This document shows positions 8,201 through 35,313 of a stretch of DNA of 64,000 nt, piece after piece. Every line of letters begins with the position of its first letter. Position 1 is the stretch's first letter. This DNA is from Oculina patagonica. Its lineage: Eukaryota. The translations under genes and the position numbers were made by a program. The notes beneath the pieces are model-generated. The model was given only the letters and a program-made list of their open reading frames with translations, was not told the DNA's origin and did no database searches. Location: assembly GCF_052425735.1 (NCBI RefSeq), contig NC_135761.1, positions 59,768,001-59,832,000 on the forward strand, in the 5' to 3' direction.

Positions 8201-11200
8201 CAATGACTATTAAGATTTGCCTGAAAATTAATTAGTCTAACATGACTTGTCTTGGGGCCTCAGAGGTGAAGGACAGGAGAGAGCTGCCATTTTACCTGGG
8301 CAGGAGAAGACCACACGACATTTGAAAACATAAAATTTAATGGTCTGGATAAAAGCAGACAAACTACTATTTTTAAAAAATGTACAACAACTTTTAGTTT
8401 GCAAGACATGTTTCGATCGTTCCAATGATCATCTTCAGTTGTGGAATCGTTTACAGTTGATGCTCACGAATGCGCATTTGTGAGCATCTGAGTAGGGACA
8501 GGAACTCACACATTTACCAACATCTGCAGCAGTCTGAGGCATGCCGTAGGCTTGCATCTAAGAACTGCTTTTCTATTGTAGATTCCGCACCCAATAGACT
8601 ACAGCTAATTTTAAAAGAGGCTGTCCACATCCGCTAGGAAAACCCCACGTTAAGTAAGCAGCTCAAACATGCTGACTTAACTCTTTCATTTTAGTATTAT
8701 GTTATTTTCTTATAAATAAGTGTCGTTTAATTTAATTTTATTTTTTTTTGCATCATTTTGTGTAATAATTGTAATTTACTAAGTTATTTTTACTGTTTAA
8801 TTTCTTTGCCGTGTATTTATACTCGCGCGCATTGTTCCATGTCTCGCACATTTAAATGCTGCACGTTAAATTTAAAATGTATCACGAATGTTGTGTATCA
8901 CGCATGTTACGCCATTGCTTGTAAAAAATTCAACTTCAACTGTAAACAATTCCACAACTGAAAATGATCGTTGGAACGATCGAAACATGTCTTGCAAACT
9001 AAAAGTTGTTGTACATTTTTTAAAAATAAAATTTAATGTTGAAAATGTCAGTTGTCTATTTGCTAAGACCCTCTGAGGTTTAGAGGCAGGGGACAGCTTA
9101 CATTTCACCTGGGCAGGAGATTACTGACTTTTTACCTGAAAAAATATCATACTTACATGTACCAACACAATGTTGCTCTTCAGAGGTGCATGTACACTGT
9201 ATTTTGAAAAAATTACAGACTAGACAGATTTCTGTACTCAGAGCAATGTCATCAGTGTGGGCAGGGAAGAATTGAGTGCGAAAAGAGACATCTACAGGAA
9301 GAGTTTGCATTTGTAAGCATGTACAACAACAAACCTATCAAACTCGCTTTTTGATGAATAAAAGATTTTCATGTGGGATTTGTTCTCTACAGGTGAAGGA
9401 TCTTGACTGTGAAGGATTGTTTGGTAACATTGAGAGTGTGTTGGAAACATCACAGAAACTGTTGAAAAGCTTAGAAGATGCTGTTCAAGACAAGGAAGGA
9501 AAAGATCAGGAACTTGGTAATACAATAATGTGTATAATTACACATTGCAACATTAATTTGTCAACTGAACGATGGAGATGTAGGGGAAAAATGCTGAACT
9601 GGCAGTCAGGGATAGGCATGACAAATAAATCCGTTACGGCTTTTAAGACATTTGAAACCAACAAAGACTGAAGATGTTTGGTTGAAACGACTTAATTTAG
9701 TTTTTTGAATGTTGTATAATTATAACATACAGTATTTAGCATTTCAGTCAGATCAGACCAGTTAATAAATCTTCATTGATGGAGATGTATCTTTTTATCG
9801 ATTTTTTTTTTTCAATTAAGTTTTTTACCCTTCACACCAGGGTCAGTGGGTAATTTGATTACATCGTTTGGCCTCTTTTAACTGTACATTTGTATTATAC
9901 AGTCACATACAATGAATTTTGTATTTTTTTTTTCAGGAAAGTGTTTTGCGGACATAGCTGAAGAGATGAAAGAAGTGTATGCTGTGTACTGTAGGAATCA
10001 TGATGATGCTATCTCACTCATGGAAAAGGTAACAAAAGCTGCATTTAGGAACCAAAGATACACAGCACTGAAATACATGTATAAATATTAGGAAGTTAAT
10101 GCACATGTACATCCAGTGTAAGCATCCGTAAAACAGGCCAAGTAAAAGTCCTGCCTTTAAGGTGGATTTCCACTGACGCGTAAATATTTACGTACGTAAA
10201 ACGTGCGTAAAAAAGATACGTAGGCAAATTTCCAGTGTCGCGTGAAAAGTAATAAAAAGCGTTTCCTTTTTTCTTGCGTTGAACGTACGTAATTAGGATT
10301 ACTGATGGCCAAGTGCGTCAGTGTTACTCCAGACACTGTGTCAAGAAGGTACAGAGGTGACAGAGGTCTACATCGAGCCTAGTGGCACATCTTGCTGGAG
10401 CATATCCCAGTTTCTGTAGCATAAAGCGACTAGGATTATTTCTACTCCCCCATGTAGGAATGGGATGCTAGTCCATCACAGGGTTACCCCCCAGCATGAG
10501 TTGGCTGGTACTAATACACCTGGGTGGAGAGAGGCACTACGAGAGTAAAGTGTCTTGCCCAAGAACACAACACAATGACCCCGGCCAGGGATCGAACCTG
10601 GAGCACTTGATCTGGAGTCCAGCTTGCTAAATGTTAGGCTGGCCACTACGCCTCCCTACTGTATCAAGAAGCAAATGAGTATTGCTACTCCCCCAAAAAG
10701 GGATGTTACTCCCTACATTAACCAATTTTAGTGTACACGCATGTTTATGTAGTGCACACACATGTACCTAATACATGCTTTTATGTGCTTGCAGTACGAG
10801 GAAGTGCCTGAGATACAAGAAGCCTTCACAAAATGTTTGGACAAGATTAGGTACATATGCATGTTCATTTGCAAGTAACAGCTCAATTGATTTTTTACTG
10901 GTTTCCGTATAAGTACATGTACCTTATTGGTACTTAATTTCGCGGGTCTTTAGTATCGCGATTTTCGCGGTATTTTTTTTTTAACGTTTTCTGACATATT
11001 TTGAGTGTTTTGAACGTACTGTTTGGCCAAATCAAAAAAATAAAACCCTGCGAAATACTGTCTCGCCAAAATCGCGAAATTAATGTTAAATCCATGAGAC
11101 CAGTTTTCTTGTTACAAACATTTTTACTAATAGTGCGAAAAGAGCAGTTTTCAATTGAGTGTCGTAAAACAAACCAAAGTAATCACTCTGGCCAATCACA

Positions 11201-13282
11201 AAGGACACAGACAATCCAGTGAACCAAATCAAAACTCGAAGCAAATACATGTCGCAGGCACGAAGCGCGGGAAAACGTGATTAATATTGGTTTTGGTTTT
11301 ACCTCTGATTTGTTGAGAAGGTGGCGCAAGTTTTTTAAACCAAACGCTAAGCATAGTAATACAAAACGAAAGCAAACACGAATTACTTTGGAAACTCAGT
11401 TGAAAGCCACTCTAACGGGCTTATAGACAGGTTAATCGGAAGTCAGGTTTTTTATGTACGTGGCGTTTTTTGAAGATCATATCTCGGAATGCAGTTCTTT
11501 TTCTCTCAATCTGAAGACTTGAAGATCGGTTTTATTATCAATCGTGGTTTTATGTTATTTTCCCTCTCTTCAGAGAACACACGCGGTGTTGGGACTTGTC
11601 GTCATTTCTTATCAAACCAGTTCAGAGAGTTCTGAAATATCCACTCTTGTTAAATGAACTACTTAAGGTGAGTGTAAATTGCTTGATAGACTGTAATCAC
11701 ACAATCCCATGACAGATGTCAATGACTTCAATAATGCCTTCCTAAATTTTGAGTGTTGCATAGCCCTAACAATTTATTCAGCTGACTACATATTGTAAGG
11801 TTTTTTTACCAAAAGAAATCCAAGCATGGTCACCATTGATATCGATAGCGGAACACCATCATCATCCGTAGTAGCTATTTTACTTGCTTCAGCAACTAAT
11901 AAAGTAAAAACTTAATAAAGTGACGACTTACCATTAACATGTATTCACATTTATCATTTGACATTATTTGAGCCTGCAGTTGGCAGGACATGTGTCACAC
12001 ATAAGAACCCAGTATATGACCTCGCTCACCATGAGTCCCCTATAGCTCAGTGGTTAGAGCGTTCCAACCGGTATTCTGGAAGGTCATGGGTTCGACTCCC
12101 GTTGGGGAACTCGGAAAATCTTTTTTCCAAGTATTTGACTTGTTTCCACTTCTCCACTTATTTTCACTTTAATAATAGTCACCATTATCATGTATTCAAA
12201 GTGATGACTTGTACCTTTAAGTGATTTTTATTTCTCTTCTTTTTTTCAAAAGTATACGCCTGAAATCCACGGGGACAAGTACAATTTGCTGAAAGCAATA
12301 TCGGTTATGACTGATGTGGCAAACGCAATCAATGAGTTTAAAAGAAGAAAAGATCTTGGTGAGTGTGTCAAATGCATCCCTTTACAAGTTAAAGCGCATC
12401 TCGTTATGAGATTTACGTTAAGAAAGAAAGAAAGTAATTGCAGGGAAAAATTGTTCGCTCCACCAATTGAATTAGGCTTCTCTCAAGCTATTGGTTCGAA
12501 AAAATGTTAAAACGTCACAAAACGAAACATTCAACCAGTACGTGTGTTAAGAAGTCCATGAGATACTCATTATATGTCTGTATTTTAGATTACTTTGTTG
12601 ACTTTTGTTGTAGACTGAAGTTTCTTTTCTTTGTTTCTCCCGAATAGTCGTCAAGTACAAAAAAGTAGAAGACAGTGGTCTAACCAATAAGATACAGAAG
12701 CTAAGCTGGCATTCAGTGGTGAAAAAAGGCTCCAGGTTTAACCAGAGGCTAACACAACTCACAGGGCTCGTGTCACAGGTATTCACTACTAATAGCAGGA
12801 AAAAAACGCTTTTGACTTTTCGAGGAAAGCCTAGTAAAACTTGTTAGCTCCGCCAAGCGATGCCTTACAAGTGCATAAAACGCCGCCAAACAGCCTTGAA
12901 TGAAAACTTCAACTTGATACAACTCACGTCAAAAAACATGATACGCGGCTTCTGATTGGAAGTATCATTTTTTTTCTCACTCGTGAAAAGGGATACACGC
13001 CATTTGATTGGTTTACATCGGTTTGCGAACGAAAATTTTCTTTGCGGCTTTCCAGTGTTTATACTGGATCTGTGTAAAATTATTATGTATATATCAACAC
13101 GAGAGGTGTTCATCGGGTATCAACGAGAGAGAGTGAGAGAGCGAGGGAGTATTTTGAGAAATGAGGTGTGAAGCCGATGAACACGCCGAGTGTTGAAATC
13201 TCCGAAAAAAAACTACGGAGAAACGGAGAAATAAAATCGTAAAAATCATGCTTTAAGATCGGGTCCAAACCACCGCACGGTT

Positions 13283-13316
<34 letters not shown>

Positions 13317-16300
13317 GTTTGAGAAGTATATATAGTGTTACAGTGCACCGTGCAGTAGACTTTATTTACGATAGCTAGCGAAAGCTCGCGCGCGCGATTT
13401 CTCGCTCTCCCTGACTGACTAGAACGCCAAGCTACGCTGGCTATATTTACGATTATATAGCTTCCTTGACGCTTCTTTTATTATTATGTTTACAAATCGA
13501 CCACGAAAACTTTACTGTTTTTTAATAAAAACTCCTTCTAATTTGTACTGTATTTTGTAGATTCATAAAGTGTTGTTTGTTTTATACCAATTTTTGTAAC
13601 ATTTTCCGTTATAATTTTCAGACTGTTGACGAAAAATTTATTGAAGAAGAGAAGAAGTTCCGTGCAGTAGAGAAAACTGTGAAAACGCTCTGGAAGAACA
13701 TCTCCACTTATTTGGAAGAATTTCAGGTAACAGTGTAGCAGCATAAATAAAAAAATCAATGACGAGAGCGCTAATGTCTCCCACCAAAGTGGCCCGGGTT
13801 CGATTCCCCGTCCCGGCGTCATATGTGGGTTGAGTTTGTTGTTGGACCTCGTCCTTGCTCCGAGGGTTTTTCTCCTGGCTTCTCCGGTTTTCCTCCCTCC
13901 AGTGTAAACCAACACTTCTAAATTCCAGTCCGACATGGATAGAGGATCCGCATGAAAATCAGCTAGAGCTGATGTGGCTTACTCTCTAAATGTAGCAATT
14001 TACTTTTTTATTTTTATTTCATTTTTATTTATTGGCTTGTAAGATCGCATTTTTACCTCATGTTTTATGTGCTCTACATGTATATCGTCGTCGTCGTCGT
14101 CGTCATCATCATCATCATCACCAGCATTATCTCATCATTTTTCTATATTTGTAAAATCACTCATGATGAAGGTTTAAAACATATCTTTGTAATGAACACT
14201 AATCGAGTTAACTATGGTATGATTCTCACTCGAGTGTTCTGTCATTGTACAGGAGACAATGGAATGTCACAAGTCATCAGGGCAGAATGTCAGTGATTTC
14301 TATCAAGAAGCTGCCACGTGTTCAGAGGTGTCCACTTATCAGAGAATACAGAAGAGGATTGGAGAAACTATCCTTTGTAGATTTGTAAGTGTTAATAATG
14401 GTCAATCCAGGCCAAGGGATAAAGGTGCCCATGATGTCAGAGAAGGTTTAAACTGCACATGTGTATTCCAAGCTTAAAACTTGCTACTATCTGGGACAAA
14501 ACTGTTGAAACACTTCGCAAATTTCCACAATTTTAGTCAACAGAGTTCAGGCTTTGCAACCGCCTCCCCCCATTTCAATGTTGTTTATGCTGTAGTGTTT
14601 TCAAAACAACGCCTGTAAAACTGCAAACCTAAGAAACAACATTTAGTAGAGGGGGGGGGGGGGGTTAAAATATTTTTACCCGCTTTTTTGAAAAGGGCGT
14701 GGAATGCGTTTGTTTCAACTAGTTTTGTCCAAGATTGTAGAAATTTCCAAGAATTTGTTTTTTTATGTGCCTTCCAAACAAGCTTCTTTGCCCCACGCTT
14801 ACGATTTTTTCTCATGTTACCACAGGCAGACCACCCTATGTGTTCGTGGTATTTTGTTTCGACATGAGACGAACAAAAGAAATTTTGAAATCTATAGGGA
14901 CTGTAAGCCGGAATGACATATCTAAACTACATTTCGCTAAATTCTTAATAAAGTTTAATGAAATGTTAAAACGGCCCGCGAGGTGAAAAATACAACAATT
15001 GAGTCGATAAACGTTTCATTTTTATTGAGATTTAGAGCGAAATGTAGTTTAGATATGTATTTCCATAGCTTTATTTCATTAACCCTATAGATTTCATTTT
15101 TTTTTTGTTCGCGACGTCTCATGTCAACAACAATAATTAACCACGAACACATAGGGTGGTCTGCCTGTGATGTTACCTTGGAACAACATGACGTCATGGA
15201 AGCAGTTTGTACGGTGTGCTGTCCTCTCGGTCGAGATAAATTACTTCAACAAGAAATATATTCACAGAGACTGATTTTCTTTCATTCCTTTTCCATTCTA
15301 TTTCATTTTTTCCATTTTCTTTTATTTCAAACAGGCCGGGATTTTAGAAGTTCTTTAGTTTATTCATTTCAAACTGACACGAATGAACCATTTTTTTTTT
15401 TTTAAAAAAAAAACTTTTATTAAGAATGTCATCAACCACCTAGCTAAGGGAAAAAATTCCCCTACTAATACGGGGACATAACGAAAAAGAGTTAAACTAA
15501 AAGGAAATGCTAAAAAAAAACTATAGCTATTTACAATAATACTATCGTGTTATGATTTATTTCATCAGATGGACAGTGTTCAGGTACAAGTTTTGTCTCC
15601 GCTCAATTCGTTACTCAACTTATTTCAAGGCCCGCAGCGTTTGATCCAGAAACGAAACGACAAGTGCTTGGACTACGATCGCTGGTCAAACAAGATTGAC
15701 AAGATAAAAGACAGGGACAAGTTAAAGGCGGTAAGTTTGTGCGACAGGGTGACGAGGGGTGGTTCTCTATTGAACGATGTTATTGGTGTCCTGTAACAAA
15801 CATCATCCTACTCTGATGAAGGTGGACAGAAACCACCGAAAAGTTAGGACTTTAAAGTTCAGATCGGATGAATCTTTCTAATTATAATCAGTCAACCGAT
15901 CGCCGCAGTCAAAGTGTTTAACTAAAGGCTGGTTTTAAATTGCGACGGAGTTAAAGTTGTAATCAGAAGCGCAGAGCGTAACAATCTATTGAGTGATCTG
16001 TTGATCCTTAACCGATGGAGTCGTAAGCAGAGTTTCGGATTCCGCTTATGACTCCGTCGCTTATGTAACTGTAACTTAAAGTTGTAGTAAAAAGCCGTTA
16101 AAATTGACAGAAATTTCATGTAAAGCCGTGGTGTATTTTTTTATCCTTAACTTCAGTTGCAAACTTAATGGGTTATATTGAAAGGATTTTTAATTGTTCT
16201 TGGGTTGTTATAATAGTTGCCAAAATGCTTTTCAGGCAAAAGAAGAACTCGAACTTGCCAAGAAGAACTACGAAGCTCTAAACACACAGCTGCTTGAAGA

Positions 16301-19300
16301 GATTCCTGGGTTCACTGAGATGTGCATGGCTCTGACGGTGGACTGTCTAGAGAACTTTGCCTTAGCACAGAACAGACTATACTGTGAAATACAGCAAGAT
16401 TATGACGAGCTGTTACAGGTATAGTTTGACTGGCATCCAAAATATTAGGGGCCTTCAGATTGGAGTACGAGATCGAGTATGAGTACGACTTTCGAATTTC
16501 AATCCAGTTACGTTTCCAGAGCCCTCACTCCTCCCTGTTGCTGACCTGTATAAAAAAAAAAGAATATCGGTACGAGATCGATGTGAAACTCTTTCCTTCG
16601 CAGAGGCCTCTTATTTTTTCATATGGGCTGGGAAATGGGGAGAGGTGAAAAGTAAGCGCGCGGAGCCTGGGGAGAATTGCAACGAAAGCGTGCGGGGGAC
16701 ACTGGGAAGGGAAAAGGCCCTTCCTGTCGTTCCCCTTATTCCCCTATTTTTTTTTTTTTCGTGTTTTTTTTGTTCGCCTTTCCCCCTGAAGGAGCCTCTG
16801 CTGAGGAGAGAGGACATGAAATGATTATCAACCAGGGCCAGGTTGTTCTAAAGCAGATTAGCACTAATTAACCCAGGATTAACTGTCGATTGGGGGGTTC
16901 CATTTCTTTTGTAGGAAAGTGTTTTTAATGCTAATGTTTTGTTAAGCTTGAGATTAGAGGACTTCAAAACTTGAGAACAGAAAATATAAACAGAAAACCT
17001 CATTGAAAAGTTAAAAAATGTAATCAAAATTCACGCTTATCCTGGATTAGTTTAATTATGCTATGAACAACCCACGTTGGGTTTGAAAAGTCATGTTATA
17101 TTTGACCAGCCGGAAACGGGGTATAACCGAGTAAAATGTATTTGGTCGGACATCTTGACCGGTGATCATGCGACCGTTATTTCCAGCCCTGCGATCTGAA
17201 GGTCCTTATTGTCTACTTGTCTTCTCGGAGGGGTGACTATAAAAGGCGCGTATACGCTGGCGATTTATGTGCAATCTTTGTCGACAACAACAACATAAGT
17301 TTATTTGAACTGTAAAATTACAAAAAGAAATTTTTAAAAAAAATTTAAAATTTTTTTTTCCCCCAACCACAAAAAAAGCCATTTTATATAAGAGGGTTTG
17401 TCGCACATTTCAATGCAGTTTTTGTCGCGCTCAAGTTGCTATTCTAAATCGCGAATGTAAACTCACTAGCATTACTGGCTTAGCAAATTCCTCCTTAGAT
17501 AGCTTAGCCAGCCAGATCGACCGTAACACATCCTGTGTAAGTTTTCGTTTTGCTTATCACGCAACACCAAGAAATAATGCCTGATACATCAGTGAAAATT
17601 TTTTTTTCTTTCAGTTGCCAGTCGTGCAGGCAGATGACGAGGACATTGTTGAGCATCACAGCAAGAGATCAGTACAAGTTATGGAACAGTTTTCAGATCT
17701 GAGCTTTATTCCGTGTAGTTTTGTAGCTAAAGACAGTTCACGCAAGAAACGGCGATCATTAAAAATTCCAAGCACGCCTTCCCACGACCCAGTAAGTACT
17801 TCATATAAGACCTATAACATATCTACTGTTTTACTGCAAAACACACATTTATGCCTCTTTCTAAGATAATTTCAAGTTACATGTGTCTAGTTTGATATCT
17901 TATCTTGATGAACAAGCTCTGTCTATCTCGCAGCAGAGTCCCAGTCGATTTTTGTTTAGTAAGACTGAACACAAACGAGCGAGAGAAATGGTGATGTCAA
18001 CAATCACTCGAACACCACCGACTACTAAACAAAAATCGACTGGGACTCTGCTGAAGCTAACCTACAGTACTAACTATTTTCAACGCCTGACTCTGGAAAG
18101 CTGGTACACAAACTTAGAACAGACGCCTATCAACAGATGTCAACAACTACCGGCACCTTACAAACGACTATTCACGACTTAAACAGAAGCGACAAACGAA
18201 CCGCCAAAGACGATTAATTTGACTAACAATAGACGGAACAGAACGACTCAATTAGACTAACAATAGACGGATCGAAACTGACCAATTACTGATGACAAAC
18301 TTTACACGAGTCTTACAGCCAATAACATCACGGCTTAACTGACCAATCAGCTTCAACGGACCAGACTTATAACATCATCGACTGACAACAACTTTTCACT
18401 TGACTCTGAAGATGACTTCCGCTCAGGTTGTCGAAACGTCAGTCACCAACAACAGTTCTTCTCAGAACTACTCTCACCCGGACGATCACACTATACGAAC
18501 TACTGATACTCCTGGGTTCAAACCATTTACTTTACTACGTAAATTGTAACAGCACATGCGCGTGTCTTATCATTTTATTAACTTCTCTCTATACAGGACG
18601 CAGTAGAAGATGATAGCGAGACCAAGAACGGCTTGTTAAATACCAAAGAAGGCGAGCTGGGTAGGGAGGGTGGGGGAGCAAAGAAAGGTCCACCACTCCC
18701 TTCCCCCGCGATTCTTCAACCACGGCCAGCGCCGCGGAGACTAAGTAGCAGAACAAGCCTGGTGAGTAAAGTTTACTTTCTTACATTCTGTATAATTCAA
18801 CTTGCATGGATAATTTAGCTTTTAATAAAGGTCTTTTCTTATAGATTGAGATTTTGATTCTCATACCTTCCTTTCTTGTATTTGATGCGATAAAGTAAAT
18901 TTTAACTGAAGTGACTCCTGTTTGGGGAAAATAACTTTCTGCGACAAATATTACTGATAGACCTGTTTTTAACTGAGTACCGCAAAACCAAAACCAAAGT
19001 AATCACTCTGGCCAATCACGAAGGGCGCGAACAATGCAGTGAACCAATCAAAACTCGAAGCAAATACATGTAGCCAGTGGGAAGCGCGGGAAAACGTGTG
19101 AGTGAGTCACAATTGGTTTTGGTTTTACTTCTGATTGGATGAGAAAGTGGCACTAGATTTTTTAACCAATCACTAAGCTAGGCTCGATTTGCGCCGCCTT
19201 CTCGAGTCCGGACTTTGTTCCTCCCCGAGAGAGACTTTTGGGAGGGAGGAGCGCGGGCTCATTTTCCTGAAGAGCGGCTGGAAATCGAGCCTATCACTAA

Positions 19301-20245
19301 GCAAGAAATGCAAAACAAAGGCAAATGCGAGTTGCTTTTGACACTCAAATGAATGCTGCTCTACTGTCAGTGTGCAACACCAAAACGAGCATGCTCGCAG
19401 CCTGAATAAATAGACGTTTCTATTTATGCGCTCAAATTTTCGTGCGCTCGAGTGGGGCGTCGAAATTCGACCCGAAAAGTTCTAATAACAGCAAGATCGC
19501 AAGAAAACTTTTTGAAGTGACAGAGGCGATGGAAACGATCGGTACGATTAGCTGAGAACCAGCCTCAAGGCTACCTTGCTCGTGTCAAATAGCTGTTTTC
19601 TAGATTCAACTGATGCAGTTTCAAGATAGCTACCTGATCTGTTGTTGTTGTTGTTTTCTTTTGACGAGTATAAGCATTTTTCTATTTTTCTAGGAGCTAA
19701 AGGATGTTGACAGCTCACAGCCAGTGGAAGTAACCCCAGGGGAAAGCAAACGCTACGTTGTCGAGTTCAACTTCGAAGCTCAAAATGCGGGGGAGTTGTC
19801 TGTATCCGAGGGGGATCTTGTCTCTGTCCTGCGTCACTCAGATAGCAGTGGTAACCCGGAATGGTGGCTGGTTCACTATAACGGAGCTTCGGGGTATATC
19901 CCGGAGAGTTATCTATCCCCGGTGGGTGACAGTGACAGTGACAATGATGGCGAAAATGATGATGGTGACGACAATACTGCACAGGACACAGATAGAACTG
20001 ATACAAACGGTGTTGAAGATGATGGTACTACATCCATGCAAGCTGAAACTGCTGTTAAGTTATACTACTGTGCAGAATTTGCGTTCGAGGCGAGCAGTGC
20101 AGCGGAGTTGAGTCTTGATGAAGGACAGTTAGTAATTGTGTTACAGAGACAGGATTTGACCGGGAATGACGAATGGTGGCTAGTGGAAGTGAACGGACAA
20201 AAAGGATATGTTCCTTCAAGTTATTTGACAGCAGTGGAGGATTAA
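2252..20245 (+). CDS. DNMBP: Dynamin-binding protein (Tuba / ARHGEF36), Cdc42-type GEF scaffold; 21 coding exons, ~1606 aa
   Basis: Exons joined by GT-AG with consistent phase: 2252-4267, 4586-4703, 4866-4945, 5613-5654, 6081-6183, 6574-6653, 7101-7239, 7499-7662, 9393-9516, 9937-10028, 10795-10850, 11574-11667, 12253-12358, 12648-12778, 13622-13726, 14253-14384, 15569-15730, 16236-16418, 17615-17791, 18597-18761, 19694-20245 (4821 nt). Four N-terminal SH3 domains (MEGSFARALY.., WLEG..GLFP). DH motifs RVLTELINTEKDY, LFGNIE, YCRNHD, SFLIKPVQRVLKYPLLL. BAR region (LIQKRNDKCLDY, YEALNTQLLEEIP). Two C-terminal SH3 (PEWWLV..GYIP, DEWWLV..GYVPSSYL). An acceptor at 2233-2234 implies an upstream non-coding exon. 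Confidence 0.93.
6290..6485 (+). mobile_element. Partial tRNA-derived CORE-type SINE
   Basis: gtgtccttgggcaag..ctttactctcacagtgcctct..ccaggtgtataaatgggtacc, the same family as 41849-42153. Confidence 0.7.
7800..8135 (-). mobile_element. SINE fragment (Deu/Nin-domain-like)
   Basis: Motifs cctactcttt..tgtgtgggttttttaac.tccc and ggcctac..gttta..tccttatccgagaaga resemble Nin/Deu SINE central domains as I recall them; (gaat)n tail-like run at the end. Confidence 0.5.
8343..9025 (+). mobile_element. Penelope-like element, 5'-truncated, with an inverted terminal pLTR copy
   Basis: GIY-YIG C-terminal remnant (RICEHLSRDRNSHIYQHL..CFSIVDSA..LKEAVHIR*ENPTLSKQLKHADLTL) at ~8470-8694. 8355-8449 is an inverted copy of 8949-9030. 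A 13-bp flanking direct repeat ATAAAATTTAATG sits at 8330-8342 and 9026-9038. Confidence 0.85.
8402..8441 (-). ncRNA. Type I minimal hammerhead ribozyme (Penelope pLTR)
   Basis: Minus strand reads caa-CTGAAGA-tgatc..gatc-GAAAC-atGTC-ttg. The plus-strand twin at 8955-8994 has a mutated core (CTGAAAA). Confidence 0.7.
10375..10656 (-). mobile_element. tRNA-derived CORE-type SINE
   Basis: Reverse complement of the 41849-42153 family (gggaggcgtagtggcc head, ggttcgatccc B box). Confidence 0.8.
11140..11415. mobile_element. MITE family (gagcagttttcaattgagtgtcg...), also at ~18960-19362 and ~23570-23840
   Basis: Three dispersed copies share aaaccaaagtaatcactctggccaatcac..aaccaatcaaaactcgaagcaaatacatgt and imperfect inverted ends. 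Confidence 0.75.
11960..12190 (+). mobile_element. tRNA-like Pol III repeat (single arm of the family forming the 50874-51207 palindrome)
   Basis: A box TAGCTCAGTGG and B box GGTTCGACTCC, followed by a T-run. The anticodon arm is non-canonical. Confidence 0.65.
13372..13443. mobile_element. Tiny TAGC..GCTA MITE with 9-bp TSD (Mutator-type)
   Basis: TSD TATTTACGA on both sides. Confidence 0.65.
13764..14005 (+). mobile_element. tRNA-derived V-domain-like SINE
   Basis: B box gggttcgattccc, then tgtgggttgagtttg..gggtttttctcc.gg..ctccggttttcctccc, followed by an (attt)-rich tail. Confidence 0.7.
14821..15169. mobile_element. MITE with CACAG termini and 7-bp TSD (P-element-like)
   Basis: TIR cacaggcagaccaccctatgtgttcgtggt; TSD ATGTTAC on both sides; further internal palindromy. 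Confidence 0.8.
17960..18532 (+). mobile_element. Penelope-like element 3' fragment
   Basis: GIY-YIG C-terminus TYSTNYFQRLTLESWYTNLEQTPINRCQQLPAPYKRL followed by a pLTR carrying a hammerhead. A degraded copy of the pLTR lies near 5900-5945. Confidence 0.82.
18401..18445 (+). ncRNA. Type I minimal hammerhead ribozyme
   Basis: Stem I tgact/agtca, core CTGAAGA, stem II gac..gtc, GAAAC-GTC cleavage triplet with palindromic ACGT (dimer-type stem III). Confidence 0.75.
19179..19293. mobile_element. Mutator-type MITE nested in another MITE
   Basis: TIR taggctcgattt/aaatcgagccta; 9-bp TSD TCACTAAGC. Confidence 0.8.
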
Positions 20246-22321
20246 AATCCCTAATAGTCTGCTCTTAATTACGATATAGTTAAACTCAAACAAATTATAA
20301 GAAAAAATGGCTCGAAGTTAATGGCTTAGCTGTAACTGTGAATAATTATCAAAATTCTCCTTGCTAAATTACATACATTTTTCTACTTCCGCTTGGAGAA
20401 TTTTGCGTAACGGTTTATCCAGACTTTTTTCTGAAATAATCAGTTTCTTATTTGTCAATTGCTCGTAAATTTTCATAATTTTCCCGGTTACAACCAAATC
20501 ACAAAGAGATCTGGGTACGAGATTGGTACCTGGCAGCAAGCGCGCGGGAAAAGTCGCATAAGCCAAGTTTGATTGGCTTACTTGTCTGCTTTTGAAGCCA
20601 TCTGTATCGATCGTCACAACACGTTTACGCTGATGATTGACATTTGACATGTTTTAATTGGTTTCCCTATCCATTGAAATTTGCTATTTTGCTTAGTTAC
20701 CAAAGAGTTGAAAAATAACGAAAAAATGTCAAACCGTTTTGACAAAGTTGATCAAACACCAGTGATCAAACACGTTAACGACAGCCAACAATGCAGTCAT
20801 TAATGTCGCTAAAAAATAAGCCGGGAATTCTATTAGCATCATTACGGTGTATGTCACTGTAAAAAAGAGGAGCTATTATTTTTCAAATGGAAATGTGCCG
20901 AGCAAGTCGCAAACCTGTTAGTCTACTAATAAAAACTCGCATTAAAGTATCGGTTTTTTTTTCTCGCTTTTAAGTTATGTGTAGATAGCCAATCTTTCTC
21001 GTCAATTTTTTATCTGTATTATAAAAACATTTTTGTTACATATCAAAAAAACAAATTTTAGGAAAATATGAAATGTTGTGCATGGAATGAATGGTGAATT
21101 TTAAAAGAATTAAGAGTGATATTTAGTATTATACGTAATATAATTTTGAATAGTTTATTTGCCCATAATATTGAAGGTGCTTAAATTTCGAGTTATAAGT
21201 TGGATAACTAAATATTACTTGCACATAAAATTGTTGTGTAATTCCGTCTGTCCAGATTTTCTAATAAAAACTTGTGCACGATTATAGAAGTCTGGTGATT
21301 TTTGTTCCGAGATCTTTTTATACGATTCTTAATACGGTTATCTTATCAGAGATTGTCGTTACTTAACCTCTGATTGTCGTTACTTAAAAATCAGACCTTT
21401 TTTACGTTCGCATTTAGCAGTCTTTTGTAACTGTTACGTTTGGGGAGTTGCTGCATTGGCCTGTGGGGGGTGGGGGTTCTTCCCGTTAACTAAAGCGTGT
21501 ACTGTATATTTTGTTGGAATAAATATTGATGGAAATCAGCCTTTGTCCTATGCAAAGAGAAGAGAAAAATTAATATGATTCAGAAGACAGAAATGCATTG
21601 TCCTTGAAATAAGTCATCAAAATAAAGATATAGACATTTTTTAAGCCTTCACTTAACGCACGGAACGCGGTGTTTTGCGTTTGGGCGGCGCTCCCTCAGG
21701 GGCAGGGGTCTACTCCCAATAGTGCTCCACCCGAAAGGGATACCTTTAAATGCTGAACGTCCACGAAAGGGTAGGGATTTCACTTCTTGCTTCACTAAAA
21801 GTGACATTTAATGGGTACTCAGGTAAGATGTTCTGTGAAGGGGTTGAAATTCTACTAGAAGTATGTGAAAGGGGTACCAATTCATTGGAAGGAATATATA
21901 ACAGCTATGGGCCTCAGAGCTGCCATCTATTTGATCGAATCTTTACTGTACACGATCAGTATTACGGAATTTTGGTGGTCTCTTTGACCAGAGGTAAAAC
22001 CTTAGTGGAAAAGGGATGTTTGTCACTATATCGTTATGTTAAAGTCAAGCTGCATATTACAAATGTGAATGAGAGAGAAACTGAATGCTCTTTCCATAGT
22101 ATTTTATTGCTGCAGTTTATTAACACCACTAAAAAACAATAGTCAAATGTCATTCAGGTCTGCATACCTAATAAATCGATTACAATGCTAACAATAGCTT
22201 CAGTTCAATTCAATTGTATTACGCAGGTAACAAAACTCAACAGCTTGACTGTTATATTCTATTGAATAGTAATATTAATGCACCCAAAGGGCTTTGTGGT
22301 TGTAGCACATTGTAGCCACAG

Positions 22322-22553
22322 CAGGGTCATAACCAAGTATATTTTTTCATCGCTGATCCCAAATTTTAGCTCTAAATTTTGATTCCTGATCCCCAAAATG
22401 TGGCAACATTTGATCCCCGATTCCATTCTGATCCCATCTGATTAGCCGATCCGGATCCCATGGCATGCCATGACTTGTGACCCAGGATCCCGGGCCCATG
22501 ATCCCGATCCCGAGGCTGTGATCCCTGATCCTATATACCTGGTTACGACCCTG
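22322..22553. mobile_element. hAT-like MITE with internal GATCCC repeats
   Basis: cagggtc.taacca.gtatat / atatacctggttacgaccctg; flanks ccacag / ccatag. Confidence 0.7.
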
Positions 22554-23991
22554 CCATAGGATTTAGCTGTAGCTGTAGATGCATCATTACGCCAGCAATG
22601 CCACCAAATAACATTAGAGGATTCTGTTACATACATACTTGGCTTACAGCTCAGATTAGAAATGTCTCGTAGATAAGTTGATAAACTAATGCATTAAGTT
22701 ACGGTACTGGCTTCTGATTCCAGGGGGTGAGGGTGGGGTCGCGTAGGGAAGAGGGTGAACTTGCATATGAAACAGTCAGGAGTCCTCTTTAGAAATTAAA
22801 TTAACCCCAAAAGGAGCCCAATCTTGGCGGGCCCTAGCTATTTTGGATCCCCAAAAGACCAAATTAAAAAAAAAATAGAATTTACATTTCTTTGCGTGCA
22901 ACCCTAAATGAGAGAAAGAGGGCCAAAAATATTGGTGTTTTGCATGGAGCACCCTTTATAATAGATTTGATTTTAACTGATGTTATTGTTTTAAGCAATA
23001 AAGACAGCAAGCATTCCCATTTCTTTCATATAGAGTCCCATTCCCCTCGGGGGTTCTGATGCCACCATTTTTTCATCAATGTTTATGAGCAGTTAGTTGA
23101 GTAAACACCTTCTATACTCATACTCCAAGTCATCCCATGAAAGATACCACTGAGAATTCACTTAAACATAACATACTGACAACACAGCTCAGCCTCTAAA
23201 CATATCCATGTGGTTTCTGTGATTGCTTGTAATTATCTGGAAAAATTTTTTATCCAATAACCAGTTGGCAGCTAAGATCTTAAGGTAGCTAATTTCAAAT
23301 TGCTTGTAAAAGTAATCACAATACATTTTTTGACAGTACTAGGTTGCACATTGTTTTACATAACCCTACATACATCTGTACTCTGTAAACTATACATGTG
23401 TACACATGTACAACTATGCTTTAAACTAAGAAGAAATACGGTTCTTAACCAATAAGTTACATAATTATATACACAATAGATTTTCAAAATGCACTTATCT
23501 TAATAAGCAATATTGTCACTGATATAAGGTTGCAAGTCTTCTGACCTATCTGTCTTGTGACTAGATAGAGAAATGTAGTGTCATAAAACCAAAACCATAG
23601 TTATCACTCTGGCAAATCATAAAGATCAAAGACAATTCATTGAACCAATCAAAACTCAAAGCAAATACATGTAGCTGAAACCAAGCAGAAGACAAGCAAG
23701 TTACAATAACTGGTTTGTACTTCTGATTGGATAAGAAAGTGCCACACACAAGCTTTTTTAACCAATCACCAAGTGCTTTAATGCAAAACCAAAACAGACA
23801 CAAAAAAAATACTTTTGCCACTGACATGAACATTGCTCTAAGTCAGCTTCAATATTAATAATAATAATTATTAGTACAATTGTGCACTGTACTGTTATAA
23901 AACAAACATTACTTAGGTAATTAAGATAATTTCATATATAGCATTATTAATAATAATTTTCTTCATTTTCAGTTTCTCTGAATCATTGTTG

Positions 23992-25447
23992 CTACAATCC
24001 AATTGAGTTGAGAACTCTGTCTTTGATGAGAGGGTCAAAGCACCCGTAACAGTTTTCAAACAGACACTGCGGCTTATTGTATTCCAGCAGCTTCTGCGGG
24101 CCACGCACCAAAAAGTGCTCTAAACTGTATGCAATACACACAATGCACTGTTCCTGGTAATCATCACATTCCTGACAAACGTAAACACGACCTGAAGACT
24201 TCCCAACAAACACGCCCTGAAGAGAAAAAGCATCCATTTTTACAAAGGGGTATCAAATGGTTTTTGTGAGCATGCCAGCCGTTTTCTTCGCGACGAGCAC
24301 TTTTCAAAAAGCTACCTCCTTTTATTGCTACTTTTCTGATCTGCCGCATGCTCTGATCGCTCTGTAGTCTTGCACAATATTCAACACGACAACTACTAAT
24401 GTATGAACATACCTGCCAACCCCCAGAGTACCAAAATCTGGAGACGTCCAGAAATCTTTGCATTGTATGGATATCATTTAAGACAATGTATGAATACTCT
24501 CTGAAAATCAGACCGGGAGACTTGATGAAAAACTTGGAGTCTCCCAGGAAAATCTGGAGAGTTGGCAGGTATGTATGAAGGTCTATAAGTGTTTTCTTGA
24601 CATGCATTGCGTACCAAAGGGCATGTAATGAATTTTGCTATTTTTTACATAAGAAAATGACATGTACAGTGTAGGGGTACAAATTTATTGAAAGCATTGT
24701 TTTCTGGAATGGTGCACATGTATGACATTAGTGACGTCTTATTTAAATGGAACTGCTGATCATTCACGCGTGCATACGATGCCAGGAATTTTTCCTCATA
24801 TACATCACTATACGTGAATGACATTTAACACATAAAATTTGATAAATGCTTTCAGCACCAAATTAAAAGGTTTGCCGAGTTTTAAATCGCCCTTTTCAAC
24901 ATTTTGAAGTTAAGCAGTTTTTATAGATAAGTTTTAAGTTTAAGCTAATTTCTAATTCATTTCTTGTTGACGTTCGACATTTATAAGCTTACATGAAAGC
25001 TAACATTTTCTTTGACAGACAACGATACGTAAGCCCAATAAATTTAGTTTACAGTGGATCGATCTTTTTTTTAAATAGACATTTGATTTCTCCTCAAATA
25101 AACGGAAGATTATTTGAATCTTATGTAAAATGATGTATTCTCACCTCTACTGGGAAAGACAAGCTTCCTTGCAGAACACCGATCTGGGCGACTTCTTCCT
25201 CGATGTAGTATTTTTTCCACACCTGTAATGTGAAGTCTTCGAATACAGTGGACTCATTACGACCAACTATTACGAGATCTCGATTGAAACCCGTTACAAT
25301 CAGCTTGCGATACTTGTAGTCGTCAAGAAAAGAGTTCAGTTCGCTTGAATTGTTGACATTTAATTGCCTTAGACGTGCGAAGAAGCGTTCCTTGTCCGTA
25401 GGATCAGCAAGCTGAAAGGCGCTGGAAATGTCACTGCACTCCGCCAT
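23992..25447 (-). CDS. US22/SUKH-like domain protein, 2 exons (25447-25145, 24216-23992), 175 aa
   Basis: ATG at 25447; donor GAG|gtgag; polypyrimidine acceptor cttttctcttcag|GGC; phase 0; TAG at 23992. The spliced protein reads ...LNSFLDDYKYRKLIV...TVFEDFTLQVWKKYYIEEEVAQIGVL...VFVGKSSGRVYVC...IVCIAYSLEHFLVRGP, matching the US22 pattern W..yl...m.vlG / v...GrVY / vA.sl..f...G as I recall it. Confidence 0.72.
24408..24573. mobile_element. MITE with 6-bp TSD (hAT6-like) in the US22-like intron
   Basis: TIR catacctgccaac/gttggcaggtatg; TSD TATGAA. Confidence 0.8.
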
Positions 25448-25860
25448 GTTTGTTCTCTGAAGTAGTAAAACCACGCCAGATAATGGGCACAAATTGATGG
25501 TAAAATCCTCAATGATCTCCGATTTACAAGAATATCCAGCAAATGCACAGTTGTTGTATAGTTCCTCCTGTGTTTATTAGCTGCCTTTACGCTCCATATC
25601 GTACAAACAAACGCACAACAAGAAATCCGAGGGCGACAACCGTGTCTGACAGATGTCAATAATCTTGCGCTGGGGGCCGGACTGAGATGAGACTAATCCT
25701 GCCCCACTCCTCCCTTTTAGAAATTTTATTGCCCCAGTTCGAATTCCTCTATTTCTTTCCGATTTTTTCTACGGAGGGTAGTATTCTTATTCTTATGTTT
25801 TACTTAATCTGTTATTTAGCTTCCCGAAAGCCACGATTAAAACGGTAACAGCAAAATGAT
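25448..25860. promoter_or_regulatory. Probable bidirectional promoter / 5' region between the US22-like and coiled-coil genes
   Basis: The two genes diverge from here. The region is locally CpG-richer with GC-box-like stretches (gggggccgg, gccccactcc). TSSs are not identifiable. Confidence 0.35.
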
Positions 25861-25914
25861 TAACTCTTAGGGGCTCTCTTGACTCTCTTGGGGTTTTTCT
25901 GCGTGGCTGTGATC

Positions 25915-26230
25915 CCCGGGGGGGGGACTCCCATATGAAACGGACGGGGATGCTCGTCGGAAATTTTGAAAAGAACCCCTAAAAGAGACCAATCTGGGTG
26001 TGGCTCAAGCCTTTCTTGACCCCTAAAAGATACCAAAAAACTAAGAATGGAGTTTATATTTGTATATTTCTTCGTGTGTAACCCTAAACGAGACCATTAT
26101 GGCTAAAAATATTGGCGTTTTGGGCGTTTTTTCCCGGAACACCCTAAGCGAGACCAAAAGTCCGAAATTTACACCCCTAAGCGAGACGACGAGCATCCCC
26201 GTCACTTTCATATGCGAGTCCCCCCCCGGG
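25915..26230. mobile_element. CCCGGG-terminated MITE with 8-bp TSD
   Basis: TIR cccgggggggggactc.catatgaaa..gacggggatgctcgtc; TSD CTGTGATC. Related copies at 28305-28616 (inverted), ~22721-23053 and ~34021-34417. Confidence 0.85.
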
Positions 26231-26342
26231 CTGTGATCGTAAGCGCCTGCAAGGTAGCATTGTCAGCGGTGACAGTACAAGGTACGCAATCAGGGACAAC
26301 ATGTGTCCCTATACATAAAGTACCTGCTACTGTACCGACCTT

Positions 26343-26755
26343 GGCGGCCCAAGCTCACAATTAGAGGAGTTAATATATTTAACATAATTCTCTTTTGTAA
26401 CCATACGCGAAACGTGACTCTCGACCGGCAGCATATGGAGGTGTTGTGTTACAACGGTTCTCATTTATAAAGGTTTGTATGGGAGAATACGCTTTCGAAT
26501 TTATAGCTAAATATAATGAGATTTTGACAATAAAATCAACTTAACTCAATGTCCTGTCGTTATGTCTGTTGTTATCTCGGTTCTCAGGCCGATCCGAGGC
26601 GTTTTAAGCGAGTTATGCAATTTTTGGTTTCCACTGAGAACCGTTGTAACACAACACCTCCATATGCTGCCGGTCGAGAGACACGTTTCGTGTATGGTTA
26701 CAAAAGAGAATTATGTTAAATATTTTAACTTCTCTAATTGTGAGCTTGGGCTGCC
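26343..26755. mobile_element. MITE / foldback element with ~120-bp near-perfect TIRs
   Basis: cccaagctcacaattaga...ccggcagcatatggaggtgttgtgttacaacggttctca mirrored at ~26635-26755. Confidence 0.8.
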
Positions 26756-33769: not shown

Positions 33770-33903
33770 NNNNNNNNNNNNNNNNNNNNNNNNNNNNNNN
33801 NNNNNNNNNNNNNNNNNNNNNNNNNNNNNNNNNNNNNNNNNNNNNNNNNNNNNNNNNNNNNNNNNNNNNNNNNNNNNNNNNNNNNNNNNNNNNNNNNNNN
33901 NNN
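33770..33903. other. Assembly gap (N-run)
   Basis: Run of N next to a (caat)n/(gatg)-type microsatellite. Confidence 0.99.
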
Positions 33904-34932: not shown

Positions 34933-35313
34933 TCAAGTGCTTGCTTGCTTGTACCCCCTCTGCAACTTGCAATAATTGTAATGATGGAAGGTAGCATTGG
35001 CGTTAAACTTTTTAGTTGCTCTGTACTTGTCAGTGGCCAACAACTCACACAGATAAAGATCTTTCGAGTCAGGATACGCCGCCATGTTAAACGAATAACA
35101 CTTTGGTTCACCAACACAAAGGAAAGTGCAATCTAACTGATCTGCCACCATGGACGATGTTATTTTCTTTACCCATAAGTAGTGGAAAGGATTTCGCTGA
35201 AAGTCGCCAACAGAGAAGTCGCCTGTTGGATTTCGATAAAGAGCACTGTCTTCCATAGTGTACATCATCATTAACTGAGAGAACAGAAACAATAGAAGTG
35301 GCAGAAGTACCAT
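34933..35313 (-). pseudogene. Truncated paralog (copy 1): signal peptide + PAN/apple domain only; pseudogene or PAN-only variant
   Basis: Near-identical to exon 1 of the paralogs (SALYRNPTGDFSVGDF...CELLATDKYRATKKF) down to ~34977, where homology stops before the donor site. No EGF or fibrinogen-like exons are visible between it and the gap. Confidence 0.6.

What the first reader, a model, noticed from the sequence alone, without database searches (positions are those of the whole stretch)
23992..25447. Intron-containing cellular US22/SUKH-like gene in an invertebrate genome
Seen: two ORF-track fragments splice cleanly (phase 0) into a 175-aa protein with the ordered motifs fl..ykyr.l.., T.f....LqvW..Yy..e.va.IG, vfVg.sGRVY and ivcIA.SLe.Fl..G. 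Established: this is the signature pattern of the US22 family, part of the SUKH superfamily. That superfamily includes bacterial immunity proteins against nuclease toxins and host-antagonist proteins of herpes-, irido-, pox- and adenoviruses, with cellular copies known mostly from some vertebrates. Inference: an intact, spliced copy among ordinary host genes, with no viral neighbours, is a domesticated or ancestral US22 protein that may act in antiviral or anti-toxin defence. It would be easy to miss because no single ORF contains the full domain.
Basis: partly seen in the sequence, partly recalled or inferred. Interest (0 to 1): 0.82.

Follow-up and report, generated by a model that had tools for sequence, protein, structure and literature searches.

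The report
Ancient cnidarian cellular US22-like gene
This is a real, spliced and expressed coral gene for a small protein with the same fold as the herpesvirus US22 family; it is single-copy, shared by corals, anemones and Hydra, and very strongly conserved, so it is an old host gene, not a viral insert, and it does not evolve like an arms-race defence gene.

Summary
On the minus strand, exon 1 (25447-25145) and exon 2 (24216-23992) join in phase 0 across a 928-nt GT..AG intron and give a 175-aa protein. Intron-less contigs from two studies and one raw polyA read carry exactly this junction.

The nearest full-length orthologue I could submit (93% identical) matches Pfam US22 at E 1e-5 over profile positions 7-120 of 124. 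At 26 bits it is below the 35-bit curated cut-off. US22 is the only recurrent Pfam hit, in 9 of 14 family members. An AlphaFold model (pLDDT 78) has the SUKH topology. Its nearest viral structures are almost all herpesvirus and iridovirus US22 proteins (35 hits at E<=1e-3, best 1e-6). Its best solved match is an SMI1/KNR4 protein (Z 5.7).

The gene is single-copy in this genome and has orthologues in stony corals, sea anemones and Hydra. The intron position is the same throughout. The DNMBP neighbour is conserved from coral to Nematostella. dN/dS is about 0.03.

It is therefore an ancient cellular gene, not viral or transposon cargo. A defence role is not supported. The most likely role is an intracellular binding adaptor for a conserved partner, which is an inference. 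A Cys-rich C-terminal tail with an invariant CYGCFDP motif is specific to this family. No paper in the library describes the gene.

The parts
23648..25644 (-). Transcribed region (minimum extent of the mRNA)
   Evidence: Intron-less contigs lie on 25644-25144 and on 24215-23960 (X1) or 24215-23648 (X3) (table 8).
25448..25644 (-). 5' UTR (about 197 nt). It holds a 6-codon upstream ORF (MERKGS) and in-frame stops before the start codon.
   Evidence: Contig extent. In-frame upstream translation shows stops and no other in-frame ATG between them and 25447.
25145..25447 (-). Coding exon 1, 101 codons (residues 1-101): the N-terminal helices, the beta-hairpin and the first strands of the US22-like domain.
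   Evidence: Translation. 100% match as the only exon-1 copy in the genome. Orthologue alignment.
24217..25144 (-). Intron, 928 nt, GT..AG, phase 0. It contains a repeat fragment at about 24408-24575.
   Evidence: Joint 'skips 928' in two contig sets and one raw read. The same intron position occurs in Stylophora (2264 nt), Nematostella (2464 nt) and Hydra (13656 nt).
23992..24216 (-). Coding exon 2, 74 codons plus stop (residues 102-175): the last strands and helix of the domain, then the conserved tail.
   Evidence: Translation. Pfam US22 positions 88-120 at E 0.028. Only copy in the genome.
24088..25342 (-). US22-like (SUKH-fold) domain, about residues 36-144, interrupted by the intron.
   Evidence: Pfam PF02393 aligns to residues 35-143 of the 174-aa proxy, E 1.2e-5. 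AF2 topology is a-a-b-b-a-b-b-b-b-a. Foldseek hits to viral US22.
23995..24087 (-). Family-specific C-terminal tail (about residues 145-175) with invariant C..C-Y-G-C-F-D-P..R. It lies beyond the Pfam domain.
   Evidence: Invariant columns C151, C156, Y157, G158, C159, P162, R167 in 14 cnidarian sequences. Low pLDDT in the model.
23577..23740 (.). Dispersed short repeat at or just beyond the 3' end of the transcript. It is not part of the coding gene.
   Evidence: At least 1253 first-look candidates genome-wide at 78-90% identity. Very high summed contig depth.
19724..20245 (+). Last coding exon of the convergent neighbour DNMBP/Tuba (SH3 domains), used as the synteny anchor.
   Evidence: ORF. 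Collinear tblastx with the Stylophora and Nematostella loci, whose neighbour carries SH3 and RhoGEF domains.

Best explanation
The locus is a bona fide two-exon, single-copy nuclear gene of a stony coral. It encodes a 175-aa (20 kDa, pI 4.8) protein with no Pfam signal-peptide or membrane-domain hit, so it is probably intracellular. The protein is one US22-like domain of the SUKH superfamily followed by a family-specific Cys-rich tail of about 30 residues. The gene is an orthologue group at least as old as the anthozoan-medusozoan split, and it evolves under very strong purifying selection. By analogy with other SUKH domains, it most likely works as a small protein-binding adaptor or stoichiometric inhibitor that clamps a conserved endogenous partner in the cleft between its helical and beta-sheet halves. 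Known SUKH examples are bacterial immunity proteins that bind toxin domains, FBXO3/SKIP16 and Smi1/Knr4 as adaptors, and viral US22 proteins that bind host factors. The five invariant cysteines, including the CYGC knuckle, may hold a metal ion that fixes the tail. Shown here: gene structure, expression, copy number, phyletic range, synteny, selection, and sequence and fold similarity. Inferred: intracellular location, binding mode, partner and metal site.
For: Splice and expression: (junction in 2 studies plus 1 raw polyA read). Single copy: (exon 1, exon 2 and the family profile find only this locus in 529 Mb). US22 sequence similarity. PF02393 is the top hit for the full-length members in which it is detected, E 6e-6 to 0.2. 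It covers nearly the full profile for most of them, 9 of 14 members match, and no other SUKH-clan Pfam family appears. Fold: (pLDDT 78, pTM 0.75, SUKH topology); 35 BFVD hits at E<=1e-3 and best 1.1e-6, nearly all the named ones being US22-family proteins such as UL23, UL24, UL26, UL28, UL29, U7, U8 and iridovirus US22; best solved chain is 3d5p SMI1/KNR4 at Z 5.7, rmsd 4.1 A over 103 residues, followed by the toxin-immunity entries 8bd1 and 8g0k, Syd 3ffv, the uncharacterised 2prv and 2icg (both named as SUKH structures in PMC3113570), Knr4 5j1b and FBXO3 9kbf; vertebrate uncharacterised proteins, SUKH-3 and herpes U7. Language-model neighbours are SUKH-3, SUKH-4, SMI1_KNR4 and US22 clusters. 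Age: orthologues in Stylophora, Nematostella, Actinia, Actinostola and Hydra. Identical phase-0 intron position. Convergent DNMBP neighbour in coral and Nematostella. Constraint: dN 0.042, dS 1.35, dN/dS 0.031 against Stylophora. All three coding polymorphisms are synonymous.
Against: Every member scores below the Pfam gathering threshold (12-27 bits against 35). The family profile does not reach viral or vertebrate US22 at E<=1e-3 in 1.8 billion proteins. Solved-structure Z scores are modest (5.7 at best, in a range the tool warns can be common). The window's own spliced protein was tested only through its exons and a 93%-identical proxy. No partner, localisation or metal binding was tested. 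The tail is poorly modelled (pLDDT 40-54).
Confidence: 0.65

Rival explanations
1. One reading: a domesticated US22 protein that acts in antiviral or anti-toxin defence, for example by neutralising a viral or bacterial nuclease toxin or antagonising a viral factor.
For: Bacterial SUKH proteins are immunity proteins against polymorphic nuclease and deaminase toxins, and viral US22 proteins act at the host-virus interface (PMC3113570). Toxin-immunity pair entries are among the better solved-structure matches (8bd1, 8g0k).
Against: One copy per genome with no paralogues. dN/dS is about 0.03 and polymorphism is synonymous only. Identity is 63-66% between corals and anemones. There is no toxin gene next to it; the neighbour is DNMBP. 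Immune and counter-immune genes usually diversify, and this one does not. A defence role against one invariant target cannot be excluded.
Confidence: 0.15
2. It is a SUKH-fold protein but not specifically a US22 (SUKH-5) clade member. On this view it is an independent, very divergent eukaryotic SUKH lineage, and its best hits to US22 reflect shared fold and composition.
For: Pfam score is below the curated cut-off. The profile search finds no viral or vertebrate US22. Atlas and AFDB searches rank bacterial SUKH-3 as high as US22.
Against: US22 is the only SUKH-clan Pfam model that any member hits. For most members the match is in register over nearly the full profile, and it holds in deeply diverged lineages (hexacorals, anemones, and P0047 from the more divergent Hydra-related set). 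The BFVD top 50 is almost uniformly US22 at probability 1.0.
Confidence: 0.15
3. It is recent viral integration or transposon cargo: a passenger US22 gene from an integrated herpes-like or irido-like virus or a large mobile element.
For: Zhang et al. 2011 attribute the known cellular US22 copies (Branchiostoma, salmon, frog, platypus) to integrated herpesviruses. The gene is flanked by a dispersed short repeat. Another first-stage note reports a Gypsy integrase about 23 kb away.
Against: Single copy. A spliceosomal intron sits at the same codon in coral, anemone and Hydra. Synteny with DNMBP is collinear in Stylophora and Nematostella. No relative was found in IMG/VR. Purifying selection is strong.
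Confidence: 0.02

Closest known systems
Herpesvirus / iridovirus US22 family (Pfam PF02393; SUKH-5 group of Zhang, Iyer & Aravind 2011, PMC3113570)
   Same: It is the best and only recurrent Pfam match, over nearly the whole profile. The motif order is the same (..W..YY..E...IG....G.F.G..G.VY....C.A.SL..F...G). The predicted fold's nearest neighbours are UL23, UL24, UL26, UL28, UL29, U7, U8 and iridovirus US22.
   Different: It is cellular, single-copy and intron-bearing, with one domain per protein; many of the viral matches are far longer proteins (240-1228 aa) of which only about 120-190 residues align. It is under extreme purifying selection. It carries an invariant Cys-rich tail (CYGCFDP) outside the Pfam domain. 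Its score is below the Pfam gathering cut-off.
Vertebrate and amphioxus cellular US22-like proteins (salmon, frog, platypus, Branchiostoma)
   Same: They are cellular genomes encoding small US22-like proteins. AFDB cluster hits 1-4 are unnamed or automatically named proteins (E 7e-5 to 4e-4), which by my reading of the accessions are frog and fish entries; the tool gave no organism.
   Different: Those copies are sporadic and are attributed to integrated herpesviruses. The cnidarian gene is a phylum-wide orthologue with conserved intron and synteny. The cnidarian profile did not reach them by sequence.
Bacterial SUKH immunity proteins (SMI1/KNR4, SUKH-3, SUKH-4, Syd; e.g. PDB 3d5p, 8bd1, 3ffv, 2prv)
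   Same: They share the core fold. The best solved match is 3d5p at Z 5.7 over 103 residues. SUKH-3 models reach TM 0.55.
   Different: There is no adjacent toxin gene and no polymorphic-toxin locus. No sequence-level match to those Pfam models was found. The context is a eukaryotic spliced gene.
Eukaryotic SUKH adaptors FBXO3 / SKIP16 / Smi1-Knr4
   Same: They are cellular SUKH domains used as protein-binding modules. Weak structural matches were found (9kbf Z 3.0, 5j1b Z 2.9, ApaG/F-box cluster TM 0.44).
   Different: There is no F-box, ApaG or other fused domain here. It is a stand-alone domain with a Cys-rich tail.

Membership tests
Pfam US22 (PF02393) | Whole-protein score at or above the curated gathering cut-off (35 bits) | tested here: not met
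   25.8 bits for the 93%-identical proxy P0007:26-199. The range is 12.2-26.7 bits among the members that match. The window's exon 2 alone scores 14.9 bits, and exon 1 alone has no hit.
Pfam US22 (PF02393) | Statistically significant, in-register alignment over the whole domain profile, reproducible in diverged members | tested here: met
   E 6.4e-6 and 1.2e-5 over profile positions 7-120 of 124. P0047, from the more divergent Hydra-related set, gives E 4e-4 over positions 3-122 of 124. 9 of 14 members match, and no other family matches more than 3.
US22 / SUKH-5 group | Predicted structure most similar to US22-family proteins | tested here: met
Model me3a01fe82ac7 (pLDDT 78). BFVD gives 35 hits at E<=1e-3, best 1.1e-6, probability 1.0, TM by query 0.46-0.60. 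Nearly all named hits are US22-family proteins.
US22 / SUKH-5 group | Encoded by large DNA viruses or integrated viral DNA, often as multigene arrays | tested here: not met
   Single copy. One domain per protein. The cellular neighbour DNMBP is conserved to Nematostella. No IMG/VR relative.
SUKH superfamily | Core of four helices and six strands: a beta-hairpin plus a four-stranded meander (PMC3113570) | tested here: met
   DSSP order of the model: H15-26, H33-42, E47-51, E56-59, H70-81, E85-92, E100-105, E111-115, E124-129, H132-138.
SUKH superfamily | Clear similarity to solved SUKH structures | tested here: inconclusive
The top chain of 48,161 is 3d5p (SMI1/KNR4), Z 5.7, rmsd 4.1 A, 103 residues. 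3ffv, 2prv, 2icg, 5j1b and 9kbf are also listed at Z 2.9-3.8. Z below 8 is within the range the tool flags as possibly common.
Bacterial toxin-immunity SUKH systems | Gene adjacent to a polymorphic toxin (nuclease or deaminase) gene | tested here: not met
   The neighbours are DNMBP in the window and Stylophora, DNMBP and ARHGAP35-like in Nematostella, and THAP and a glycosyltransferase in Hydra.

The most novel reading that the evidence does not exclude
The US22-type SUKH domain is an ancestral animal gene, present before the anthozoan-medusozoan split and kept as a single essential copy in Cnidaria. On this reading the herpesvirus, iridovirus, poxvirus and adenovirus US22 families descend from capture of such a host gene, not the reverse. 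The cnidarian protein would then reveal the original cellular partner or pathway that the viral copies mimic or hijack. Its invariant Cys tail may form a metal-binding latch that the viral copies lack.
Probability: 0.2. Interest if true: 0.7.

Novelty: new member of a known kind. Interest (0 to 1): 0.5.

Why it matters
US22 proteins are a large, poorly understood family of herpesvirus host-manipulation factors. Their known cellular copies have been treated as debris of integrated viruses. A phylum-wide, single-copy, intron-bearing and strongly constrained US22-like gene shows that this domain has a long-standing cellular job in early-branching animals. Because it is present in Nematostella and Hydra, it offers tractable systems for finding what a stand-alone US22 domain binds. 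It also bears on the direction of host-virus gene flow for this family. In databases the orthologues are only 'uncharacterized protein', and the domain is missed at Pfam's threshold and is split by an intron.

Tried and rejected
- Foldseek against PDB with the first, shallow-alignment model (pLDDT 61) gave nothing significant; 3d5p was only rank 7 at E 1.3.
- The family profile against PDB sequences gave only chance-level hits: CagZ and a telomerase p19, E 0.15-0.3.
- Weak Pfam hits to CagZ, DUF7529, DUF7563 and NleG (E 0.02-0.2) were inconsistent across members and were rejected.
- The exhaustive profile search of 1.8 billion representatives found only 28 proteins. All are cnidarian-type full-length proteins or exon fragments, apart from one repetitive 1171-aa protein that looks bacterial and was judged spurious. 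No viral or bilaterian relative appeared.
- The IMG/VR scan found no relative.
- NCBIfam gave nothing.
- Rfam on 22500-26500 gave nothing.
- The genome-wide PF02393 scan gave three sub-threshold hits elsewhere. The best is riddled with stops and looks like ordinary non-coding sequence, so I judged them chance. That scan missed this locus because each exon alone scores too low.
- AFDB Swiss-Prot gave only weak Syd matches.
- The language-model search on the tail alone gave scores below 0.9 and was not informative.
- Paper searches for US22 with Nematostella, with cnidarian terms or with the orthologues' LOC ids found no relevant paper: three returned nothing and the broad cnidarian-term search listed none that mentions US22.
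- No complex prediction was run, because no specific partner is claimed.
Exon references and a 93%-identical orthologue were used instead.
- A phylogeny with viral US22 could not be built, because no viral or vertebrate US22 sequences were retrievable by reference.

Full report
**1. Observation**

The minus strand of 23992-25447 holds two coding pieces.
- Exon 1 (25447-25145) encodes 101 residues and ends GAG|GTGAGA.
- Exon 2 starts after a pyrimidine tract and CAG|G at 24216 and runs 74 codons to TAG at 23992-23994.
- Joined in phase 0, they give 528 nt and 175 aa (20.1 kDa, pI 4.8, 8 Cys).
- The first in-frame ATG after upstream stops is at 25447.

Public runs laid on 23400-25900 show one joint, 24215->25144, 'skips 928', CT..AC on the + strand (GT..AG on the gene strand). 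One contig in each of two runs from two studies carries it, with at least 255 nt on either side, and one raw polyA RNA read carries it too. The contigs extend from 25644 to 23648, and the intron has essentially no depth apart from a repeat fragment. The contig runs are only guessed to be RNA. The intron-less form together with the raw polyA read makes transcription and splicing the straightforward reading. Three coding differences in one run are all synonymous third-position changes.

**2. What the protein is**

*Sequence.* The window's exon 2 alone hits Pfam US22 (PF02393) at E 0.028 over profile positions 88-120 of 124, and exon 1 alone has no US22 hit. Spliced orthologues give much more.
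- P0036 gives E 6.4e-6, and the Stylophora protein cut to the shared start (P0007:26-199, 92.6% identical to the window protein) gives E 1.2e-5. Both cover positions 7-120 of 124.
- Anemone orthologues give E 0.002-0.2, and the more divergent P0047 gives E 4e-4 over positions 3-122 of 124.
- 9 of 14 full-length members match US22. No other family matches more than 3, and no other SUKH-clan model appears.
- All scores (12-27 bits) are below the curated 35-bit cut-off, so formal Pfam membership is not met.

*Fold.* A first AlphaFold model from 6 sequences (pLDDT 61) already had the SUKH order of elements. A 30-row alignment that included trimmed exon fragments raised it to pLDDT 78 and pTM 0.75. 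Its topology is a-a-b-b-a-b-b-b-b-a, which is the four-helix, hairpin-plus-meander core described for SUKH domains (PMC3113570).
- Foldseek against viral models returns 35 hits at E<=1e-3, best 1.1e-6, probability 1.0.
- An exhaustive alignment to 48,161 solved chains puts an SMI1/KNR4 protein first (3d5p, Z 5.7, rmsd 4.1 A, 103 residues). Two toxin-immunity entries (8bd1, 8g0k), Syd (3ffv), 2prv, 2icg, Knr4 and FBXO3 follow lower down. The Z values are modest, but the recurrence of one superfamily is not what chance gives.
- AlphaFold DB clusters give unnamed or automatically named proteins first (frog and fish by my reading of the accessions; the tool gave no organism), then SUKH-3 proteins.
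- The ESM Atlas gives SUKH-3 and herpes U7 at TM 0.55.
- Language-model neighbours are SUKH-3, SUKH-4, SMI1_KNR4 and US22 clusters.

Taken together, the protein is a SUKH-fold domain whose closest relatives by sequence and by shape are US22 proteins.

**3. Cellular or viral, young or old**

*Copy number.* The coral genome (529 Mb) has one copy. Exon 1, exon 2 and the family profile each find only this locus.

*Phyletic range.* Database searches find the protein in many stony corals, including Stylophora LOC111345441. They also find it in the anemones Nematostella, Actinia and Actinostola at 63-66% identity, and in Hydra vulgaris (LOC105848884), with several further unnamed lineages that group with Hydra or with the octocoral-like set. 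The taxon labels for the unnamed groups are my inference from sequence grouping. An exhaustive profile search of 1.8 billion representatives found 28 proteins. All are of this family except one repetitive, bacterial-looking protein, with nothing viral or bilaterian. IMG/VR holds no relative.

*Intron.* Every genomic exon-1 fragment ends ..E followed by a GT-derived V. Explicit splicing of the Stylophora, Nematostella and Hydra loci puts the phase-0 intron at the same codon, with intron lengths of 2.3, 2.5 and 13.7 kb.

*Synteny.* In Stylophora and Nematostella the gene lies tail-to-tail with the SH3/RhoGEF gene DNMBP, exactly as in the window. tblastx is collinear through at least ten DNMBP exons. 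Hydra has other neighbours.

*Selection.* Against Stylophora, dN is 0.042 and dS is 1.35, giving dN/dS 0.031. In deeper pairs synonymous sites are saturated while dN stays at or below 0.28 to Nematostella.

This is an old, vertically inherited host gene. The transposon-cargo and recent-integration readings are excluded.

**4. How it probably works**

No function was tested here. Three points shape the inference.
- SUKH domains are binding modules. They act as immunity proteins that clamp toxin domains in bacteria, as adaptors in FBXO3, SKIP16 and Smi1/Knr4, and as host-factor binders in viruses (PMC3113570).
- This protein is a bare domain. No Pfam signal-peptide or membrane-domain hit was found, and it is acidic.
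- It is single-copy and among the more constrained genes one sees, which argues for an invariant endogenous partner and against a fast-moving pathogen target.

I therefore favour an intracellular adaptor or stoichiometric inhibitor of a conserved cellular protein.

A feature specific to this family is the tail beyond the Pfam domain: G-P-x5-Y-x3-4-C-x4-C-Y-G-C-F-D-P-x3-4-R. Its residues C151, C156, C159, Y157, G158, P162 and R167 are invariant, as are the core cysteines C114 and C127. Five invariant cysteines in a probably cytosolic protein suggest a metal site. The model, built without metal, is unsure there (pLDDT 40-54). This remains untested.

**5. Comparison with what is known, and novelty**

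Zhang, Iyer and Aravind (2011) list cellular SUKH-5/US22 copies only in Branchiostoma, salmon, a frog and platypus, and attribute them to integrated herpesviruses. Searches of the held literature for US22 together with Nematostella, cnidarian terms or the orthologues' LOC identifiers found no relevant paper. The orthologues are deposited as uncharacterised or predicted proteins. I therefore file the finding as a new member (a new cellular, cnidarian-wide orthologue group) of a known domain family.

Two caveats apply. The Pfam cut-off is not met. The direction of transfer between animals and viruses is also open, because no viral or vertebrate US22 sequences could be retrieved here for a tree.

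**6. Verdict**

- Observation: confirmed.
- Family assignment: well supported as 'US22-like, SUKH fold'.
- 'Ancestral or domesticated cellular gene': supported.
- Defence function: unsupported.
- Interest is moderate. The case is clean and somewhat surprising for virus-host evolution, and it gives a tractable handle on US22 biology, but the function is unknown and the domain itself is known.

Noticed in passing
window 23577-23740: A dispersed short repeat of about 165-175 nt sits at or just beyond the 3' end of the transcript. There are at least 1253 first-look candidates in the genome at 78-90% identity. Summed contig depth in the runs guessed to be RNA is very high (9,000-22,000). It looks like a SINE/MITE-type element. 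There is no Rfam match.
   Followed up: partly
window 24408-24575 (inside the intron): A second repeat fragment has elevated contig depth (150-350) and many short contigs that run on into unrelated sequence.
   Followed up: no
window about 25576-25596, minus strand: A six-codon upstream ORF (MERKGS, then two stops) lies in the 5' UTR, in frame with the main ORF. It may affect translation.
   Followed up: no
L006:10001-10075 (Stylophora LOC111345441): The NCBI model starts 25 codons upstream of the conserved MA.. start. In the window the equivalent stretch is similar in sequence but has no in-frame ATG, and transcript-derived proteins of other corals start at MA... The extension is probably an annotation artefact or lineage-specific.
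   Followed up: partly
L012:10001-24184 (Hydra vulgaris LOC105848884): The Hydra orthologue keeps the same intron position, but the intron is 13.7 kb. Its neighbours are a THAP gene and a glycosyltransferase-49 gene, not DNMBP.
   Followed up: partly
L008:1-8542 (Nematostella): In Nematostella the gene lies between two Rho-pathway genes: ARHGAP35/p190RhoGAP-like upstream and the Cdc42 GEF DNMBP downstream. Only the DNMBP side is found in the coral window.
   Followed up: partly
G000:C14:16755964-16756260 (L013): This is the best genome-wide PF02393 hit outside the locus (24.7 bits, E 0.008). It has 7 stops in about 99 codons and reads like ordinary non-coding or unrelated sequence, so it is probably chance.
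   Followed up: partly
window 34933-35313 and 39650-40291 (minus strand); 38452-39060 (minus strand): Two similar ORFs share an N-terminal segment (..MEDSALYRNPTGDFSVGDF..), one of them with an EGF-like Cys pattern. A Cys-rich ORF of 202 aa lies nearby. These are probably exons of tandemly duplicated secreted-protein genes.
   Followed up: no
window about 33770-33880: A run of N (assembly gap or masked stretch) shows as X in an ORF translation. It was left untouched.
   Followed up: no
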